The translations under genes were made by a program, and so were the position numbers. The notes beneath the pieces were generated by a model. That model saw only the letters and a list, made by a program, of their open reading frames with translations. It ran no database searches and was not told the DNA's origin. A stretch of DNA of 64,000 bases from Paramoeba atlantica (taxonomy: Eukaryota > Protista > Discosea), in contig CDRNVI010000070.1 in NCBI GenBank assembly GCA_977017575.1, positions 124,001 through 188,000 of the forward strand, given 5' to 3'. The stretch's first letter is position 1. Every line of letters begins with the position of its first letter. Shown here one piece after another: positions 2,953 through 38,000 of this stretch.

Positions 2953-3030
2953 TACAGTATATTACTGTGTTTCTCTTTATAAACCCCCCACAGCGAATAA
3001 GTCACCCCCCTCTTTTTTTTGTACAACGAG

Positions 3031-3680
3031 GCTTAGGGGGGTTGCGGCACCACTTTTTCGTTCAAAATTTTGAGATCTGCACGTTCCCACTGTTTTTAGA
3101 CCTCTTCACAGATAACAAATTAAAACTCATTTTTTTGATGACGCTTTTACATAGTCATGCCAATATTACCCGAAAAATCTCATGTTCCTCGACCAGGGGG
3201 GGAGAAGGGGGTCAACATGAAAATGGTGTCACAGATCTTCGCTAGGGGAACGAGATCTCTCGTTTGCAACAGAAATGATCAAAAACAGATAACAAACATT
3301 CAATTTGTCACGTGGTGGAATATTTGTCTTTGATTGGTTCTTTCTTGAAACGGTGATAAATCACCTTTTTTAAGCTGTCCCCTTTAGTTTTTGCTTGAAG
3401 GGGCCTAAGGGGGTTAAGATATCATTTTCTCGTTCAAAATTCTGAGATCTACACGTTCCCACCATTTTTAGATCATTTTAGAAACTGAAAAAGAAAATTG
3501 TTTTTAGGTTCTATTTTTTTGCATCGTCATACCACACTAATTTAAGAAAGCAAACACTCCGCGGCCAGGGGGCACAACTGGGTCAATATTAAAAAATAAC
3601 GGCAAAGATCTTTGCTAGGAGAACGAGATCTCTCGTTCGCAACAAAAATCAGCAAAAACGGACAAAAATAATTGAATTTC
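3031..3680. repeat. Diverged tandem duplication (period about 372 bp) with conserved AGATCT-containing blocks
   Basis: CGTTCAAAATT(T/C)TGAGATCT at 3059 and 3431; AGATCTT(C/T)GCTAGG(G/A)GAACGAGATCTCTCGTT at 3233 and 3606. Confidence 0.8.
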
Positions 3681-28441: not shown

Positions 28442-29902
28442 ATGAGCTTTGAAACGAAGTCAAAGACACGCTTATCGTTTTTATGGTCTTTCTTATCTGA
28501 TGTAAGATTGGTCGTGCCTCTAATCCTTTTTCTGGCTGGATGTTGGAATTCTAACCCACTCTATGGATTATTGAGACCCTTTTCTCCACAAAATTTAACA
28601 TCACCAAATACGTCGGCTCCATATACGCCGCATGAAGGAGTGGAGTTCTCGTGCCCTATCTCTCCGTTTGAAAAATCGTCCTACTCATTTTCCTCTCCAT
28701 CCTCGGGGTTCATTTACGAACGCTTAAACACTGCTCTTCCTACCAGCGAAATAGAAAGGGACATAATTGACCATTGCAGATGTTCTGTCCAAGACGTCCG
28801 AAGACATCACCGTGAAATTCTGGAAAGCCTCAACGTGATCGTCCGACACCCCTATTTTCGTTACTTTCGCGCCGACCTCAACCGTCCGTGTCCTTTCTGG
28901 GCGGTCCAGTTGATTTGTAGCGCCACCGTGAATGGCACCTCCCCATGTACTGTACGAAAGTGTGAGCCCGAGGCGATCCCTGCCTCGCTGCGCACCGATT
29001 GTGGAATGGACTTACCTCCCAGTGACGTCAGCGATATCCCGCTTAACCGTCGCGTCACGGCGTTTCGCAAAATTCCGTGGTCCAATGGCCTGGAGGACAC
29101 AACAGCTAGTCCGTGTCCCGAAAAAGCGGAGTACGTCGATCTGGTACTTAACCCAGAATCCAATACTTATTACACTGGGGCGCTCGCCAGTAATGTCTGG
29201 CGCACGATCTATGAGGACAATTGTTTTCGCTCCGAAATTTCCTCACAGTTATGCACACAAGAACTTTTGTACTACCAACTGCTCAGTGGGCTGCATACTT
29301 CGATTTCAGTCCATTTGTGCGGCAAGTATCATCCGCTGTGTCCCGCAACACAAAGAACGGATGAACCCGTTGTGATTGATCATGACACGGAGTGGGAATG
29401 GAACTTACAAGAATTTCGTCGTCGTGTGGGTGATCACACGGACCGCATCCGTAACCTTCACATACTTTACCTCTTTGTGATGCGTGCGGTAAGCAAATCC
29501 CGGACAGCCTTACTCTCGGCAAATTACAGTCAAGGTAGTATTCCGTGTTCAGAAGACATTCATGTGCTTCGTCAGATGGAAAGACTCTTATCTGCGCCCT
29601 TGCTTTGCATTGACCCGTTTAACGAAGTGGAAGTTTTGAAATCAAGTTCTCCATCTGTAGATTTCGTGAAAGAAATGAATTTGAAGCTACAAAATGTTAC
29701 ACGAATTATGGATTGTCTGAGCTGTGAAAAATGCAGACTGTGGGGAAAGGTTCAACTGCTAGGACTGAATGCGGCCGTTCGGATTGTGCTTTCGAATGAA
29801 GCCCCGCATCTTGGCAGATCGGAGCTAATATCTCTGATAAACCTTTTTCGTCAAATCAGCGATTCTATTCATCGGTCAGAGATGATGTCAGCTCAATTAT
29901 GA
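28442..29902 (+). CDS. ERO1: ER oxidoreductin 1
   Basis: YFRYF..L.RPCPFW, YVDLVLNPE, SGLHTSISVHL, MDCLSCEKCRLWGKVQ (CxxCxxC). Confidence 0.95.
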   Translation: MSFETKSKTRLSFLWSFLSDVRLVVPLILFLAGCWNSNPLYGLLRPFSPQNLTSPNTSAPYTPHEGVEFSCPISPFEKSSYSFSSPSSGFIYERLNTALPTSEIERDIIDHCRCSVQDVRRHHREILESLNVIVRHPYFRYFRADLNRPCPFWAVQLICSATVNGTSPCTVRKCEPEAIPASLRTDCGMDLPPSDVSDIPLNRRVTAFRKIPWSNGLEDTTASPCPEKAEYVDLVLNPESNTYYTGALASNVWRTIYEDNCFRSEISSQLCTQELLYYQLLSGLHTSISVHLCGKYHPLCPATQRTDEPVVIDHDTEWEWNLQEFRRRVGDHTDRIRNLHILYLFVMRAVSKSRTALLSANYSQGSIPCSEDIHVLRQMERLLSAPLLCIDPFNEVEVLKSSSPSVDFVKEMNLKLQNVTRIMDCLSCEKCRLWGKVQLLGLNAAVRIVLSNEAPHLGRSELISLINLFRQISDSIHRSEMMSAQL

Positions 29903-30129
29903 CTTTTTACAGTGGGCGGAGGGGGTTTATAGTCAATTTTCTATGGCGTGCTGATTGGTTGCTTTTTGTAGTCAATGGTTTGGTACGAAGTCGAACAAAT
30001 CGAAATACATGTGCACAATTACGCACATTATTAAGTCAGATAATCGTTCCTTTATGTGCTACACTCATGGTACACTTTATATGTTAGTATTCGGTGCATA
30101 TGAGTATCTATTCATTTCAATCTTAATTC

Positions 30130-31770
30130 ATGATTGGTGCAAAAGACACAGTATCGGAAGAGTTCCAATCGCTTCTAAACCATGAAGAATATGGAGAACT
30201 TAAATCCCGATTGACTTCGACAATTACGGAAACCTGTACTCCGTTTTTGAGATTCCAGACACAATATAACCTTTCCTTATGTGAATTCCGGAGTGGAGCT
30301 CATCTGGAAATATCTAGCCGACCTAATCGAATCGTTCCATTAAGCGTCTTTACCAAAGATGCTACAAACCTGCCCACTGTTCATAATGATTCGTGGTGTT
30401 GTATCGAATACCCAGGACATGAGCTTGTGCAGTACAATGAAGCCTTGATGTTATATGAGAATTTGTGGTACGACCTTGCGCTCGCCCGATTGCGACCTTT
30501 GTTTCATTTTAGAGAACACTTGCCCCCAGATTCGACTCTTCGTATTGCACTTCTCATGTTAGGGACTTTGATTGCTCAAAAAAATGTGAATCACGATGAC
30601 ACCGAAATTTTGTTACAGTTCTTAAGCTCTGAGCGGAAACGTATGAATGCACTTGACGAGAGTGAAGGTAGTGACATGTCCTTCACTTATCAGCTGCAAC
30701 TTAAAGCTGTAGCGCTGCTGCGTTCATACGGAAAGACGTCGAAGAGTGAAAAAGCTTCTTCTACATCTGAATTCACAGACGCACTAGCCTTATATTCCCG
30801 TTCACTGCACGCGGATCTGAAAGGCATCACTGCATCATCGAAAGGAAATAAATTGGCGGTCCTGTACTCTCATATAGCTACATCCTACACGATCTTGGGA
30901 ACACCAAATCTGGCTGAGACTTTTTTGTATCAAGCTCAAGCGCTTGCAAGTAGCGCATCGCTACGTGGCGTTATGCTGTTCGCACTGTCGCGCTTGCGCT
31001 ACGACAATCATGATTACAAGAATTGCCTGTCAATGCTTCGGCACTCGTCCGAGCTTTTGCCACTAAATGTACAAAATCTACTTTATGAGGCTCTACTTTG
31101 CTGTGATAGAGAGAAATGGGATCGAAGATCAAACACTTCCGCCGTTGAGATGAAGAGCGAAAAGTCAGCGTGCTTGAACAAAGCAAAGAAAATCACGGCT
31201 GTACTCGTAAACGAATTGGACCATAAAGAGTGTTGGCTAGAAGATGCGGAGTGTGCAATTGAAAGGAGTCATGAAAAAATTCGCCAACTCCAAACTCTTT
31301 ACAATCCAGACGTCTCCGCTCCTGAGTGGGCAAATATTTGTGTGTCGTATCAAAATGAGACTGCGCTGATATCAGCCTACATGGCTCTTCGGAAATCGAG
31401 CTTTACGTCGGCACTTTGGCATGCGAAACAAGTGCTTCATCAGAGAAATGTAAATATTAAACATACTTCACGAGCCTTGTTGTATTGTTCAGAAGCTCTA
31501 GTCATGATGTCTCGAATTCCAGAGGCCCTGGAAATGCTTTTGCAAGTTCCTATAGACACTTGGGTTAAAGGGTCTAAACAAGAAAAAGAATGGCTAGATT
31601 GTGATTCCGGACTTCTTCGGAGGGCTTTAGCCCTCCTTTCACTTTGTCTTGCATTTGAAGACGAGACAGAAAAAGCCAAGCTGCTGATTCAGGCTACAAA
31701 TTTTGAATTTAGTAAGCCTGTACAAAGGTTTATTGATCATTTCTTTCAGATAAATGAAAGTGCCATGTGA
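30130..31770 (+). CDS. CNOT10: CCR4-NOT subunit 10-like TPR protein
   Basis: SAYMALRKSSFTSALWHAKQVL...ALLYCSEALVMMSRIPEALEML resembles the CNOT10 C-terminal TPRs. Confidence 0.7.
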   Translation: MIGAKDTVSEEFQSLLNHEEYGELKSRLTSTITETCTPFLRFQTQYNLSLCEFRSGAHLEISSRPNRIVPLSVFTKDATNLPTVHNDSWCCIEYPGHELVQYNEALMLYENLWYDLALARLRPLFHFREHLPPDSTLRIALLMLGTLIAQKNVNHDDTEILLQFLSSERKRMNALDESEGSDMSFTYQLQLKAVALLRSYGKTSKSEKASSTSEFTDALALYSRSLHADLKGITASSKGNKLAVLYSHIATSYTILGTPNLAETFLYQAQALASSASLRGVMLFALSRLRYDNHDYKNCLSMLRHSSELLPLNVQNLLYEALLCCDREKWDRRSNTSAVEMKSEKSACLNKAKKITAVLVNELDHKECWLEDAECAIERSHEKIRQLQTLYNPDVSAPEWANICVSYQNETALISAYMALRKSSFTSALWHAKQVLHQRNVNIKHTSRALLYCSEALVMMSRIPEALEMLLQVPIDTWVKGSKQEKEWLDCDSGLLRRALALLSLCLAFEDETEKAKLLIQATNFEFSKPVQRFIDHFFQINESAM

Positions 31771-33386: not shown

Positions 33387-33824
33387 AAAAAAATCAACTC
33401 TTTTTTTACCTTTGCGTGCCCTGTTCTGTATGCATTTCAGGTGCATTCAGTTATGATATCACGAACTAATATTGCCCGAAATTAATATGCATATTTAAGA
33501 ATACAAGCATCTCCTTTTACAGCTACTATCCTCCGCTCTACTTTGAAATAGTGTAGATGATAATGAGCGATCACTGTTTGTTGCTTCGCTTAAAATTTAA
33601 GGGAGTAAGAGGGACAAAATGATTCGGTGGTAAATAGAACAAATTTTCATTCTTCATCTCAATTATACTTTACTGTGCACATATTTTGCGATGCAAAAAT
33701 ATCCAAATTCATGGAAAGCTTTGACGAAACACCGATTGTAGGCATGACAGGTGAGGCATGTACAATGCTCGCGCATGTTATTGTTGGAATTGCGATGGAC
33801 ACGGTCGAATTGTCTGCCAAACTT

Positions 33825-33847
33825 CATAGCTGTCATTCGACGTCGAA
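33825..33847 (+). repeat. Left terminal inverted repeat
   Basis: Exact reverse complement of 37291-37313. Confidence 0.95.
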
Positions 33848-34006
33848 TTCGACGTCGTTCGACGGTCGAAAGGTCGAAACATTTTGAGTGCTTGTGTGGT
33901 TTCTGAAAGAATTTTTTTCAACAGAATATATGTTTATAAAATGTTTAAAAAATGTATTTGCAACCAGTCTTCTACTTTTTTGTGTTAATTTACTTCTTTT
34001 TTCACA

Positions 34007-36631
34007 ATGCACACCTCTGTTCGAGGAAGAGGGCGCATGATTCCTATCCGCATACCTTCTCCCCCAGCTCTTTCATCAGATGCAATCGTGCCAACTTTAG
34101 CTGAAGCAAATTCTTCCGAATCTGTTTCATCTACTACTCCTTCAGTTACTTCGGTTCGTGCCAAGAGAACCAATTCGGCGAAGAAGAATAGAACTGCCAT
34201 GCAGCGAGATGCTTCCACGGAAGCAGCAGATGGTCCTACCCAGAGCAGATTTGAAATTTCCGATAACGTTCCGTCAGGGAGTTATGTTCCTGTCTCAGTA
34301 CGACGAGAGTGTACCGCGAGGCTTGAAGAGGAAATGTCGTCCTCTCCATCACAACAGGCAAGCTCTGTAAGGCAAGTAGTTCGAAAACAGCTTGTACAGG
34401 ACCCAATGCGGTTTCCCCGTATTTCGACAAAATTCTTTCGTGAACGCTGCTTGGGAATGGATACCCCGCCTGGTAGAACGAAAGATTTGGAGAAGAAAAA
34501 CAAAGAGTGTCGCGAATACGCCGAGAAATATCCTCGGCCCCATCTCGTGAATACCATGGGCCAGCGGACTCACATAAAGTGTCGCGACTGTCCGTGGTGG
34601 AGTCATTCGCTCCATAACAACCATTACTATCACCATATCAATCACACTTGTTTAGTGCGCGAGGGACAGAGAATCGCAAACGAACCGGAACTTTTTTCAC
34701 TGACCCCGAACGACAATTCAATGAGTGTAAATGTTTTTGTTCGTCGCTGCGTTCCCTGTCTTGTGGCAAAGACGAACTTGTCATGCAAAGCTGCACACGC
34801 TTTACTTCGTAACTATGAAGAATTACGCCCCAAGCGAGCAAATACTGAAGAAATTCTCAATGCACTCGGCAACAATCACAGGGTCATGCGTGATTGGGAG
34901 AAGGACTTGGCCAACGAAATATGGGAAAAAATGATTTCAAAAATCGATATTCATCCTTTCTTCGGGGTAGCTGTGGATGCTGGGGTTGATTCCGTGCTCA
35001 ACGAGCACGTATTAGTAGGGGTGGTGTATGTTTCAGATGAGCAATATCTATTACCACCCATGTATCATCCGAAGCGGAAGGCATTCAACGGCAAAGAAAC
35101 AGCTGAGAGTTTGGTTAATACATTGAATTCTATTCTCGGCATTACCCTGGTACGAAAAATGAGGTTTTTAATGGTGGATGGCTGTGCCGTTAACCACGTG
35201 GCCCGTGATGAGGCAGAAGGAGAATTAAAAAGAATATATGATCGCGTTCAAAGAATTGGGGAGTCGGACTGGATAAACTTCGGAAACCGGGCCGTGGACA
35301 TGATGCCACACGTCTCCTTACTATCTTGCTTTGGTCATTTTCTCAATAACCTCGCGATGGATGCGATGAAACCCTTTCAGGAAACACCCCTTTTTGAACT
35401 TAAAAAGCTCTTCAGACAAACATTTTATGGACATGACAAGATCTGTACGAAGAAGGGGCGGTATCGTGGTGTGGCCCTAGACGTTCTTCTTGGATCTTTC
35501 GACGAAGAAACTAACAAAGCGGAACAATTTTTCACTCAATGGTATGGGGGGCTGTCTAGCAATAAACTGGACGATGAATATCAGACAGAGCTGGTGTGTC
35601 AGCTTCGCAGCAGCGTACAAATTTTGAAACAATATGCGCCCGATGAAGCTGATATAATTTTGGCGGAACTGAACGCTCAGCATGAAAATATTCCTCGCTG
35701 TCGTGACGCACTTTCATTGTATGGACCTCAAGTAATTGAAGCTGTTCGTAGAGCAAAGGATGTACACGGCATTACGGCTCCTAAGTTAGGGGGAGTTACT
35801 CGCTGGTGCCATGATAAGTTCAGCAGCATTTCCTTCTTTTCTACTCAGTTACCTACTGTTGTCGCGTTCCTGAAGCAAGAACTGGAAAACCCCCGAGTTT
35901 GTCAGTCTGTACGTAAGTGTGCGGATCTTATTGCTCGGGAAGGGGTAGATAACCTGGCGACTTCCGCAAAATATTTTCTTGAAGAACTAGCTCCTATCCA
36001 GAAAGCGTTACAAAAATTTTCGGATTTAGACGGTACGCCTTTAGCAACGGGAGTTTGGCCAACTTTAGAAAGATTACGGAAGGCTAGTCGGGTGGGAAGC
36101 TGCAGTGAAGCTTTTGAATGTGCCCTCAAGCATCACATAAATCGACTTTCAGTTCATCACAATATGAAATATTGGGAAGACGTCATGTGGTTTGCACCGG
36201 ATTTCATTGCACTACGCGCCCGGAAAGCCGGTCTCGAACCAATTCATTTCAGTCGTGCTAACGACCTTTTTCGAGGCGGTTCTCCCATTTTTCAAATTAC
36301 GGAAAATGAATGGAATGAATATGTGAATTGCGTCGACTACGAATGGGATTCGCGAGTGCACAAGTGCGAATTGCATTGGTGGCAAACAGTTGGAGTCTAC
36401 AAATACCCAGGTATACATCAAGCGGCGATACATTATTTATGGGTACCCCCTTTAGTGACGAAATGTGATTCTTGGATGTCGGTTATGAACACCAAGTACA
36501 ACTCCCGTCAATCATCCATGGGCACTCAAACAGTACAAAACTCTATGCTGTTACGGGGGAACTACGACAAACTCGGGTATCTTGACAATTTGGAACAGTT
36601 AGGATCAGCGGGAAATGGGGATTCGGTGTAA
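34007..36631 (+). CDS. hAT-family transposase, 874 aa
   Basis: BED-like CRDC...HHINHTC; VAVD324; LMVD391G; C441FGH; TR599W; C-terminal HWW..VGVYKYPGIHQAAIHYLWVPPLVTKCD821SWMS (hAT dimerisation-domain pattern). Confidence 0.85.
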   Translation: MHTSVRGRGRMIPIRIPSPPALSSDAIVPTLAEANSSESVSSTTPSVTSVRAKRTNSAKKNRTAMQRDASTEAADGPTQSRFEISDNVPSGSYVPVSVRRECTARLEEEMSSSPSQQASSVRQVVRKQLVQDPMRFPRISTKFFRERCLGMDTPPGRTKDLEKKNKECREYAEKYPRPHLVNTMGQRTHIKCRDCPWWSHSLHNNHYYHHINHTCLVREGQRIANEPELFSLTPNDNSMSVNVFVRRCVPCLVAKTNLSCKAAHALLRNYEELRPKRANTEEILNALGNNHRVMRDWEKDLANEIWEKMISKIDIHPFFGVAVDAGVDSVLNEHVLVGVVYVSDEQYLLPPMYHPKRKAFNGKETAESLVNTLNSILGITLVRKMRFLMVDGCAVNHVARDEAEGELKRIYDRVQRIGESDWINFGNRAVDMMPHVSLLSCFGHFLNNLAMDAMKPFQETPLFELKKLFRQTFYGHDKICTKKGRYRGVALDVLLGSFDEETNKAEQFFTQWYGGLSSNKLDDEYQTELVCQLRSSVQILKQYAPDEADIILAELNAQHENIPRCRDALSLYGPQVIEAVRRAKDVHGITAPKLGGVTRWCHDKFSSISFFSTQLPTVVAFLKQELENPRVCQSVRKCADLIAREGVDNLATSAKYFLEELAPIQKALQKFSDLDGTPLATGVWPTLERLRKASRVGSCSEAFECALKHHINRLSVHHNMKYWEDVMWFAPDFIALRARKAGLEPIHFSRANDLFRGGSPIFQITENEWNEYVNCVDYEWDSRVHKCELHWWQTVGVYKYPGIHQAAIHYLWVPPLVTKCDSWMSVMNTKYNSRQSSMGTQTVQNSMLLRGNYDKLGYLDNLEQLGSAGNGDSV

Positions 36632-37290
36632 CTTCTTTCAAGCTTCCGAATTACTTAATGGCTCCTGATGCGAGTCTGCTTTTTTTCTGATACGTCATAA
36701 ATTCATAACCCATTATAATATTGTTATATTGTATTACTGTATAATTATTTATGTATGGATGTTTCATGTATTGTTCGGAAACTGGTATTTTCTGGGGTTT
36801 TTTCCATGTTTTGTCTCATACTTCAGGACCATTAAGGCTAAACTTTTTCCCCACACTTAAATTTTTCTTGTATTATTGCAACGCGAGATATTTTGTGCTT
36901 AGCTATACGGCAACAGTAAACGTCATAAGCTTATACTATGATAATGACTAGTACAGTCATAATTTTCCGTATCTTTTTATTAAACTTCATTAATTACGTA
37001 TTTGAACATGTTTCAAATAAAAGGTGACGCATTTAACACGGTTAGAACTTCCTAGCGGTCTGACGAACAATCTGACGACAACCATACGTTGCTACTTTCT
37101 TATTCTCTGGTAGTCATCTATTCGTCCGAATACCATAGCAAATTACTGTAGTGAAAAGAATCCGTCGATCGAAACATTTTTTCAAGTGCTGCACATGAAC
37201 ACAAGAATCCCCCATTTTTTTCCTTCGTTCGACGTCGAAAGACCCATTTTTTCGACGTCGAAAGGCATTCGAAGACGTCGAATTGCAATT

Positions 37291-37313
37291 TTCGACGTCG
37301 AATGACAGCTATG
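37291..37313 (-). repeat. Right terminal inverted repeat
   Basis: Exact reverse complement of 33825-33847. Confidence 0.95.
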
Positions 37314-38000
37314 AAACTTAGTGTAAGTTTCAAAAGGAATAAACGAGCCAAAAATTCAAGACCTTTACAGCGTCGTGATGCTACAGAGACGCAGACATTC
37401 CCTTTACAAGTGTCAAAAGCAATAGAACAACCGGCGAAAAGTGCAAAAGGCGGAACATACCCATGAGCTGAGGGATGGCAAGAACGAAGAAAAAGCCAAG
37501 TGGAATATAAAATCAATTTACTAAATATGCGTGCGCACAATATGTATCAGCCACAATTCAAAAGTCAAATGATACATTTAGTAAAAGAGCACAAAAAGTA
37601 TCCCCCTAGCATTGAAAATATCTGTGCATCCTCAAAGCGGATCAGACTTGTTGGCGGTACGGAACAACCTGCAACGCAGCATCAGAATTTAGAAGAAGTA
37701 ATCATAAACGTCATTACGCTTGAAGATATTCGAATTTCTCATAAAGTTTTGCAACAAAGAAGGAATTTCTTTAGACAATTATAAAGTTTCGCATAGAGGA
37801 GACGTCAAAAAATAGAGGAATGCCTACTAGAGGCTAAGTTTTCTTGCTATTCTGTGATATACAGAATATATACAGTATGATAGTATCCGTGCATCGGTAA
37901 GGTTAATGCTCTACGATTTCCCATGGATATAATTTTGAAAATCATGGCCTATGTTCCCTCACAGTCCAATAGCTCTTTCCTCCTCATTTTTTTTATCTTA

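What the first reader, a model, noticed from the sequence alone, without database searches (positions are those of the whole stretch)
33819..37319. Apparently intact, young hAT-like cut-and-paste transposon in a kinetoplastid-type genome
Seen: perfect 23-bp TIRs, an exact target duplication (AAACTT), and an uninterrupted 874-codon ORF with BED-like finger, acidic residues, CxxH, RW and hAT C-terminal motifs. Established: well-studied trypanosomatid genomes carry retroelements (ingi/L1Tc, SIDER, VIPER, SLACS/CZAR, TATE) and are regarded as lacking class II DNA transposons. Inference: unmutated ends plus an intact ORF imply a recent and possibly active element. If the organism is Perkinsela-like, horizontal acquisition (e.g. 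from an amoeba host) is plausible.
Basis: partly seen in the sequence, partly recalled or inferred. Interest (0 to 1): 0.9.

Follow-up and report, generated by a model that had tools for sequence, protein, structure and literature searches.

The report
Active hAT-type transposon in a kinetoplastid
This is a complete, very recently mobile cut-and-paste "jumping gene" of the hAT type in a relative of trypanosomes, a group in which the papers I could search report only decayed Merlin elements among DNA transposons.

Summary
Window 33819-37319 is a 3,489-bp element with perfect 23-bp inverted ends, an AAACTT duplication on both sides and an open 874-codon gene.

**What the protein is.** It is a very divergent hAT transposase. 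Pfam alone misses it, but a family profile hits Hermes at E 2.6e-13. The alignment-based model superposes on Hermes at Z 25.5 over 402 residues. The clade differs from classical hAT in two ways: the third catalytic residue is Asp (D-D-D), and the target duplication is 6 bp.

**How young it is.**
- Five intact copies differ by 0-14 bases and have different 6-bp duplications.
- The window's insertion and the C23 copy are each absent from the matching contig of the other haplotype, which carries a precise empty site.
- Contigs from two sequencing runs also hold the empty form of the window's site.
- A frameshifted subfamily and a copy with an internal deletion have moved too.

**Host.** The genome is kinetoplastid. 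RPC2 groups with the Papus ankaliazontas dataset, beside Bodo and the trypanosomatids.

**Origin.** The amoeba-transfer idea gains no support. The genome holds many older hAT lineages, and the Papus dataset has a member of the same subclade.

The scan met related hAT copies before on other DNA of this genome (s1-369916, s1-370228).

The parts
33819..33824 (.). Left target-site duplication, AAACTT
   Evidence: The empty allele on contig C44 carries this hexamer once.
33825..33847 (+). Left 23-bp terminal inverted repeat, starting CATAG. Its inner 12 nt are the palindrome TTCGACGTCGAA.
33848..33880 (+). Left subterminal repeats of the TCGACGTCGAA-like motif; presumed transposase binding sites
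   Evidence: Nine of the 10 motif matches in the window lie in the element's ends; about 1 match is expected by chance.
34007..36631 (+). Transposase gene, 874 codons. An alternative start at Met11 was used by a public gene call (P0152).
34580..34651 (+). BED-like zinc finger, residues 192-215 (C-x2-C-x14-H-x3-5-C/H)
   Evidence: C192 in 22 of 22, C195 in 28 of 28, H210 in 19 of 21. There is no Pfam zf-BED hit.
34976..35338 (+). First half of the RNase H-like catalytic core: D324, D391, N396 and C441-x2-H444
   Evidence: for conservation. for the strand and helix order b1-b2-b3-a1-b4-a2-b5.
35801..35806 (+). R599-W600, the hAT 'RW' motif; it aligns with Hermes 'TRW'
36467..36469 (+). D821, the third catalytic residue; it aligns without gaps to Hermes E572
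   Evidence: for the alignment. Asp in 32 of 34 relatives.
36632..37221 (+). AT-rich 3' non-coding part. About 36782-36983 is shared with other repeats of the genome.
   Evidence: 84-86% hits on C87 and C157; loose ends at 36782 and 36814.
37222..37290 (+). Right subterminal repeats of the TCGACGTCGAA motif
37291..37313 (-). Right 23-bp terminal inverted repeat
37314..37319 (.). Right target-site duplication, AAACTT

Best explanation
This is an autonomous cut-and-paste DNA transposon of the hAT superfamily. It belongs to a divergent clade with a D-D-D active site and 6-bp target duplications, and it has transposed so recently in this kinetoplastid that most tested insertions are present on only one of the two haplotypes.

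Inferred mechanism: the 874-aa transposase binds the palindromic TTCGACGTCGAA motifs inside and next to the 23-bp ends through its N-terminal BED-like zinc finger. It pairs the two ends as a multimer through the C-terminal hAT domain. Its RNase H-like site (D324, D391, D821, helped by C441/H444 and R599-W600) cuts the element out through hairpins on the flanking DNA, as Hermes does. It then joins the 3'-OH ends into a new target cut with a 6-bp stagger.

Shown here: the anatomy, the homology and fold, the conserved residues, the copy identity, the different duplications at different sites, the empty alleles, and mobilised defective derivatives.

Inferred only: the chemistry, the binding sites, and expression by read-through of the one-directional gene array plus trans-splicing.
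For: - **Homology.** A profile of 54 relatives hits Hermes transposase at E 2.6e-13. The TRW motif and the C-terminal block align without gaps.
- **Fold.** The alignment-based AlphaFold model has pLDDT 79.6. The top 12 Foldseek hits are all Hermes at probability 1.0. VIA-align gives Z 25.5, rmsd 3.4 A, 402 residues, model 280-858 against Hermes 135-609. The next fold scores Z 11.2 and the P element 8.8.
- **Pfam.** 21 of 54 relatives hit Dimer_Tnp_hAT at E <= 0.01, and three of the ten scanned one by one score above the cut-off.
- **Mobility.** Nine genomic places hold the element with both ends (eight full-length, one with an internal deletion). Eight of them have exact 6-bp duplications, seven different ones because two places are one locus.
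- **Youth.** The window copy and the C23 copy are identical over 3,489 bp. C3 differs by 1 base, C38 by 9 and C69 by 11. All five keep the 874-codon ORF.
- **Empty alleles.** The window's flanks abut on C44 and share one AAACTT. The C23 flanks abut on C14 and share one ACACAT. The left-flank matches of the C69 and C10 copies on C34 and C58 stop at the insertion point.
- **Reads.** Contigs of runs X1 and X2 hold a 33818->37314 joint with 6 shared letters. Its depth is 2 against a flank depth of about 5 in X1, and 50 against 55-113 in X2.
- **Defective relatives moved too.** A shared-frameshift subfamily has only 3 differences between two loci. A copy with a 1,077-bp internal deletion keeps both ends and a 6-bp duplication.
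Against: - The protein alone fails Pfam's cut-off: 13.2 against 21.4 bits.
- The duplication is 6 bp, not the usual 8.
- The third catalytic residue is Asp, not Glu.
- The end starts CATAG, which fits the usual hAT start (YARNG, from my own knowledge) at only 4 of 5 positions.
- No transposition or excision event was observed directly.
- Evidence for transcription is thin: one 236-nt contig in a run only guessed to be RNA, and an identical 169-aa N-terminal peptide in EukProt.
- I could not inspect the model's coordinates, so I could not check that the three Asp residues sit together.
- Which copy, or which related family, supplies the working enzyme is unknown.
Confidence: 0.85

Rival explanations
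1. The family arrived recently by horizontal transfer, for example from an amoeba host or from prey. That would explain the near-identical copies.
For: The five intact copies differ by 0-14 bases over 3.5 kb. Among 1.84 billion representatives only 127 proteins match, most from unnamed metagenome contigs. The donor therefore cannot be excluded.
Against: The same genome holds a 97% subfamily, copies at 56-58% identity, and many lineages at 36-43% identity, several with open frames. The Papus ankaliazontas dataset has a member of the same strongly supported subclade. No amoebozoan relative turned up. A burst from a resident lineage explains the data without any transfer.
Confidence: 0.1
2. The element is a recently mobile hAT but does not move itself. 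Its D-D-D protein is inactive or regulatory, and another hAT family in the genome moves the copies.
For: Frameshifted and internally deleted copies have clearly been moved by an enzyme they do not encode. The genome has many other intact hAT genes. Asp in place of the canonical Glu is untested.
Against: All catalytic and hairpin motifs are kept across the whole clade. Asp at the third site is in 32 of 34 relatives, so it is under selection rather than a lesion. Five copies keep the full ORF without a single stop. The defective copies share this family's ends, not those of another family.
Confidence: 0.08
3. It belongs to another superfamily with an RNase H-like transposase (P, Kolobok, MULE, IS-derived), and the hAT resemblance is superficial.
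For: The 6-bp duplication and the D-D-D triad are atypical for hAT. The Pfam hit on the protein alone is below the cut-off.
Against: Hermes is the only strong structural match, at Z 25.5 against 11.2 or less for all others, and the match includes the all-helical insertion domain and the C-terminal domain. The sequence profile hits Hermes at E 2.6e-13 and nothing else below E 0.1. hAT groups with 5-, 6- and 7-bp duplications are already described (PMC12730594).
Confidence: 0.03
4. It is a domesticated, transposase-derived host gene, or a fixed single-copy ortholog.
For: None beyond the intact ORF and its sense orientation within the gene array.
Against: The element is multi-copy, with ends and duplications at unrelated sites. 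It is absent from the allelic contig. It is absent from the syntenic site in two related metagenome genomes.
Confidence: 0.01

Closest known systems
Hermes (Musca domestica), the only hAT transposase with solved structures; also Ac, hobo and Tol2 (from my own knowledge)
   Same: The fold matches over the catalytic core, the helical insertion domain and the C-terminal domain (Z 25.5). The two Asp residues, CxxH, RW and the C-terminal block align. Both have an N-terminal BED-type finger, short ends with subterminal repeats, and internal-deletion derivatives like Ds.
   Different: Only about 11% identity. The third catalytic residue is Asp, not Glu. The duplication is 6 bp, not 8. There is a long disordered N-terminal region of about 130 aa. 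The host is a kinetoplastid with polycistronic transcription.
hAT6 group (Kapitonov and Jurka 2007, Repbase Reports, as cited in PMC12730594)
   Same: hAT elements that make 6-bp target duplications.
   Different: PMC12730594 places hAT6 inside an animal lineage with Blackjack. I could not obtain hAT6 sequences, so kinship and the nature of their third catalytic residue are untested.
Merlin elements of Bodo saltans and Perkinsela (PMC8101967)
   Same: DNA transposons in non-trypanosomatid kinetoplastids.
   Different: Merlin is a different superfamily (IS1595-like). The paper describes its Bodo saltans copies as very degenerate and its Perkinsela transposase as preserved yet inactive. This hAT family has identical intact copies and insertion polymorphism.

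Membership tests
hAT superfamily | RNase H-like catalytic core interrupted by a large all-helical insertion domain, as in Hermes | tested here: met
   Model pLDDT 79.6. Hermes matches at Z 25.5 with 402 residues aligned; all other folds score 11.2 or less.
hAT superfamily | C-terminal hAT dimerisation domain (Pfam PF05699) | tested here: inconclusive
   The protein itself scores 13.2 bits against the 21.4 cut-off. 21 of 54 relatives hit the family at E <= 0.01, three of the ten scanned one by one score above the cut-off, and the family profile aligns this block to Hermes.
hAT superfamily | D-D-E catalytic triad | tested here: not met
   D324 and D391 are conserved. The third position, aligned to Hermes E572, is Asp in 32 of 34 relatives. 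The change is chemically conservative and holds across the clade.
hAT superfamily | CxxH and RW motifs tied to hairpin formation on flanking DNA | tested here: met
   C441 is kept in 30 of 31, H444 in 31 of 32, R599 in 33 of 34 and W600 in 31 of 34 relatives. TRW aligns to Hermes TRW. The link to hairpin formation is from my own knowledge of Hermes, not tested here.
hAT superfamily | 8-bp target-site duplication | tested here: not met
   Eight places with both ends show exact 6-bp duplications, seven of them different because two places are one locus. 5-, 6- and 7-bp hAT groups are described (PMC12730594).
hAT superfamily | Short terminal inverted repeats (about 10-25 bp) with subterminal repeats | tested here: met
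   23-bp perfect ends. TCGACGTCGAA motifs cluster in both ends, with 9 of the window's 10 matches there. The CATAG start fits YARNG at 4 of 5 positions; the YARNG consensus is from my own knowledge.
hAT superfamily | N-terminal BED zinc finger | tested here: inconclusive
   The conserved pattern C-x2-C-x14-H-x3-5-C/H is present, and the model shows strands followed by a helix there. There is no Pfam zf-BED hit.
Active (autonomous) transposon | Intact gene, identical copies at different sites, and insertion polymorphism | tested here: met
Active (autonomous) transposon | Observed excision or new insertion, and enzyme activity | not testable with these tools
   This needs time-series sequencing of clonal lines or a transposition assay.
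Kinetoplastid host | One-directional intronless gene arrays, and placement among kinetoplastids | tested here: met
   28 of the 33 ORFs of 200 aa or more are on the + strand, and all 5 minus-strand ones overlap longer + strand ORFs. RPC2 is 59% identical to the Papus dataset sequence and 49% to Bodo saltans and Trypanosoma rangeli. A quick tree puts this clade next to Bodo and the trypanosomatids, apart from the diplonemid and the euglenids, with SH-aLRT 99. This is one gene and a quick tree only.

The most novel reading that the evidence does not exclude
A living D-D-D branch of the hAT superfamily has persisted and diversified in early-branching kinetoplastids and is transposing now. It may be expressed simply by riding the host's polycistronic transcription and trans-splicing. 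It would be the first active endogenous DNA transposon known in Kinetoplastea, and a natural starting point for a transposon tool in a group whose parasitic members have lost all class II elements.
Probability: 0.5. Interest if true: 0.75.

Novelty: new variant of a known kind. Interest (0 to 1): 0.66.

Why it matters
Reviews up to 2025 state that trypanosomatids carry no DNA transposons. For kinetoplastids as a whole they report only Merlin elements, described as degenerate in Bodo saltans and inactive in Perkinsela (PMC8101967, PMC12278014).

An intact hAT family that is still polymorphic between haplotypes changes that picture. It shows that class II elements can thrive in a genome with polycistronic, promoter-poor transcription. 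The loss in trypanosomatids then looks like a real event rather than an incompatibility.

It also gives a testable model for how a transposase gets expressed without its own promoter.

The clade-wide Asp at the third catalytic site, together with 6-bp duplications, widens the known chemistry and geometry of hAT enzymes. An enzyme that works in a kinetoplastid nucleus could be useful for insertional mutagenesis.

Tried and rejected
- **Single-sequence AlphaFold** gave pLDDT 33 and was useless.
- **phmmer of the protein alone against PDB** gave only a chance spastin hit.
- **Rfam on the window** found nothing.
- **The word-indexed search with the family alignment** added almost nothing.
- **Paraflagellar-rod family PF05149 in the genome** found nothing, but the controls did not ring either, so this is uninformative.
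- **A search with a neighbouring 631-aa protein**, meant to place the host, returned only the protein itself.
- **The feature search on RPC2** was useless for taxonomy.
The rebuilt empty site has only a 120-codon open frame. The 431-aa gene that sits at this position in two related genomes has no detectable remnant here. I found no evidence of gene disruption.
- **Sense-orientation bias.** 6 of 8 assessable loci are in the sense orientation. I judged this from the 8 kb on one side of each copy only, and the count is too small to be significant.
- **C3 and C38 copies** sit inside other repeats, so their allelic state is unclear.
Full report
**1. Observation**

The stretch 33819-37319 reads AAACTT, then a 23-bp end starting CATAG, then 3,443 bp of interior, then the exact reverse complement of that end, then AAACTT. 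The repeat finder reports 25 complementary bases. The extra two come from the duplication itself, because AAACTT ends in TT and starts with AA.

The + strand carries one uninterrupted ORF, 34007-36631, of 874 codons.

The end sequence occurs 25 times in the 45.7-Mb genome at up to two mismatches. The reversed control occurs 0 times.

The palindrome TTCGACGTCGAA forms the inner half of each end and recurs just inside both ends. Nine of the window's ten matches to TCGACGTCGAA lie there, against about one expected by chance.

**2. What the protein is**

Tests on the protein alone fail:
- Pfam gives only Dimer_Tnp_hAT, at E 0.081 and below the cut-off.
- phmmer against PDB sequences finds nothing real.
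- A single-sequence fold fails.

An exhaustive HMMER search of 1.84 billion representatives finds only 127 relatives, mostly fragments from metagenome contigs. Of ten full-length relatives, three score above Pfam's cut-off for the hAT C-terminal domain. Across a 54-sequence alignment, 21 members hit it at E <= 0.01.

A profile of that alignment hits Hermes transposase at E 2.6e-13, and nothing else below E 0.1. The TRW motif and the C-terminal block align without gaps.

With the alignment, AlphaFold gives pLDDT 79.6 and the expected order of strands and helices. The top 12 Foldseek hits are all Hermes, at probability 1.0. VIA-align gives Z 25.5, rmsd 3.4 A and 402 aligned residues, spanning model 280-858 against Hermes 135-609. 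The next fold (ISCth4) scores 11.2, retroviral integrase cores score about 10, and the P element scores 8.8.

The language-model neighbours are hAT, DUF659 and ZBED clusters. I treat these as leads only.

Residues conserved across the clade:

| Feature | Conservation |
|---|---|
| Zinc finger C192-x2-C195-x14-H210-x3-5-C/H | C192 22/22, C195 28/28, H210 19/21 |
| D324 | 31/31 |
| D391 | 29/30 |
| N396 | 28/29 |
| C441-x2-H444 | C441 30/31, H444 31/32 |
| T598-R599-W600 | R599 33/34, W600 31/34 |
| W792 | 36/38 |
| D821 | 32/34 |
| S825 | 31/32 |

D821 aligns to Hermes E572. So the whole clade, including distant members that pass the Pfam hAT model, has Asp where classical hAT enzymes have Glu.

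I found no paper describing a D-D-D hAT. The library is incomplete, and Repbase was not available.

**3. Copies and their age**

The genome holds the following copies:
- Five full-length copies with the intact 874-codon ORF, on C70 (this window), C23, C3, C38 and C69.
- A subfamily about 98% identical in aligned bases (97% by BLAST, which counts its seven small gaps), with a shared frameshift. It is on C10 and on C39/C40. C39 and C40 are the same locus assembled twice.
- One copy with a 1,077-bp internal deletion that keeps both ends.
- Several truncated copies.

The window copy and the C23 copy are identical over all 3,489 bp. C3 differs by one base, C38 by 9 and C69 by 11. The two frameshifted loci differ by only 3 bases, so a defective element was moved by an enzyme supplied from elsewhere.

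Eight genomic places with both ends have exact 6-bp duplications. Seven are different, because C39 and C40 are one locus. In locus orientation they read AAACTT, ACACAT, AAGAAT, GATCGA, ACCCCC, GCCTTT and TGTATC. The C69 copy has a mutated end base and an imperfect duplication.

Six base pairs is therefore the family's rule. hAT groups with 5-, 6- and 7-bp duplications are already named (PMC12730594, citing Kapitonov and Jurka 2007).

**4. Empty sites**

The assembly is partly haplotype-resolved.

- **Window locus.** The left flank, up to and including AAACTT, matches C44:844420-845138 at 98%. The right flank, starting with AAACTT, matches C44:843737-844425 at 99%. The two matches overlap by exactly those six bases. 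C44 is therefore a precise empty site.
- **C23 copy.** The same holds on C14, with a single ACACAT.
- **C69 and C10 copies.** The left-flank match on the partner contig stops at the insertion point and does not run into the 30 element bases I had included. The partners are C34 at 95% and C58 at 100%.
- **C3 and C38 copies.** These sit inside other repeats, so their state is unclear.

Independent support comes from Logan contigs of two runs of the same organism. They hold a joint from 33818 to 37314 with six letters that fit either side and 24 letters on the shorter side. By my own reasoning, this is what a k=31 assembly graph would produce for an empty-allele bubble. The flank contigs break exactly at 33824 and 37314. 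The joint's depth is 2 against a flank depth of about 5 in X1, and 50 against 55-113 in X2.

The empty site is clean, with one copy of the hexamer and no footprint. It is therefore most simply the never-occupied allele.

Two related genomes from metagenomes share the gene order around RPC2 and have no element at this site.

**5. Host**

28 of the 33 ORFs of 200 aa or more in the window lie on the + strand, and none shows an intron. All five minus-strand ORFs overlap longer + strand ones. Neighbouring genes include ERO1, a Sec7 protein, a PPR protein and RNA polymerase III subunit 2.

| RPC2 compared with | Identity |
|---|---|
| Two unnamed long-read metagenome contigs | 65% and 62% |
| Papus ankaliazontas (PhM-4) dataset | 59% |
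| Bodo saltans, Trypanosoma rangeli | 49% |
| Leishmania infantum | 48% |

A quick tree groups the window, the two metagenome contigs and the Papus sequence with SH-aLRT 99. It places them next to Bodo and the trypanosomatids, on the far side of a 99-supported branch from the diplonemid, the euglenids and other eukaryotes.

The host is therefore a kinetoplastid, probably near Prokinetoplastina, and it is not Bodo saltans. Two caveats apply. This is one gene and a quick tree. From memory, Papus is grown on a kinetoplastid prey, so the dataset sequence could belong to that prey.

**6. Origin**

The genome holds many other hAT-like genes at 36-58% identity, several with open frames. The first look raised 484 candidates, of which 52 were scored.

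In a quick tree of the clade, the query sits in a strongly supported subclade. That subclade also contains a second family from a long-read assembly that probably represents the same or a close organism, a family from a freshwater-type metagenome, two Logan contigs, and the Papus sequence.

Long residence and repeated bursts explain this better than a recent arrival from an amoeba. No amoebozoan relative turned up, but I could not run a test against curated amoebozoan hATs.

**7. Expression**

In eight loci where neighbouring genes could be judged, six copies lie in the sense orientation. The count is too small to be significant.

An identical 169-aa N-terminal peptide is in EukProt. A 236-nt contig inside the ORF is in a 2015 run that is only guessed to be RNA.

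Read-through transcription plus trans-splicing is a reasonable inference for a kinetoplastid. It was not shown here.

**8. Comparison and novelty**

The element works like Hermes or Ac, and by fold and sequence profile it belongs to the hAT superfamily. Two textbook features are not met: Glu at the third catalytic site and the 8-bp duplication. The first appears unreported in the papers I could search. The second has precedents.

In the papers I could search, only Merlin has been reported among DNA transposons in kinetoplastids. A 2025 survey of 57 trypanosomatid genomes found none (PMC8101967, PMC12278014).

Other agents of this scan have already met hAT remnants, and also Tc1 and IS30-type elements, elsewhere in this genome. 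This report is therefore not the scan's first sighting of a hAT here. It is the report that documents an intact master-type copy and its hemizygous state.

**9. Verdict**

The finding is real and was correctly read. I rate it an interesting new variant of a known kind. My confidence is 0.85 that it is an autonomous hAT-superfamily element that has been active very recently.

Noticed in passing
G000 contig pairs C70/C44, C23/C14, C69/C34, C10/C58, C39/C40: The 45.7-Mb assembly is partly haplotype-resolved. Partner contigs are 95-100% identical, so copy counts of any repeat in this genome may be inflated, and insertions can be scored as hemizygous or homozygous.
   Followed up: partly
window 33387-33824 plus 37320-37922; L035:6590-7885; L036:6506-7795: Two related metagenome genomes have a 429-431-aa gene between the ortholog of the 389-aa gene and RPC2. 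The window has only about 1 kb of non-coding DNA there, with no detectable remnant. ERO1 and a 546-aa gene (28442-31770) are extra relative to those relatives.
   Followed up: partly
window 36782-36983; G000 C87:260615-275394, C157: Part of the element's 3' non-coding region is 84-86% similar to a tandem array with a period of about 2.9 kb on C87 and to copies on C157. Read contigs branch at 36782 and 36814. The element may have captured, or shares, another repeat.
   Followed up: no
G000 C45:135727-137778, C26:229489-231540, C71:200998-203049, C51:383195-385246, C42:85477-88050 and others: There are many further hAT-like genes at 36-43% identity, several with open frames of 700-900 codons, and two at 56-58% identity (C56, C79). 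The hAT population in this genome is diversified.
   Followed up: partly
L034:83-101 and 3015-3033 (Logan contig of SRR22388331): A 3,044-bp contig from an unknown organism carries an 812-aa D-D-D-type hAT gene that passes Pfam's hAT model. It lies between 19-nt inverted repeats made of GTATAC-type palindromes, so it is probably a whole element of a distant family.
   Followed up: no
L038:3257-4249 (ENA ERZ24900291 contig): An IS30-like gene (HTH_38 plus rve, weak hits) lies 1.7 kb from a hAT fragment that is 54% identical to the query. This echoes the IS30-type elements that other agents reported in this genome.
   Followed up: no
window 34007-34039: A public gene call (P0152, 864 aa) starts at Met11 rather than Met1. 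Downstream of the pyrimidine tract that runs up to the first ATG, the first AG lies between the two ATGs, so the real start codon depends on where the spliced leader is added.
   Followed up: no
G000 C3:618839-620040 and C38:26655-27855: The C3 and C38 copies are inserted into other abundant repeats, with flank hits at 76-99% identity in dozens of places, including long arrays on C87.
   Followed up: no
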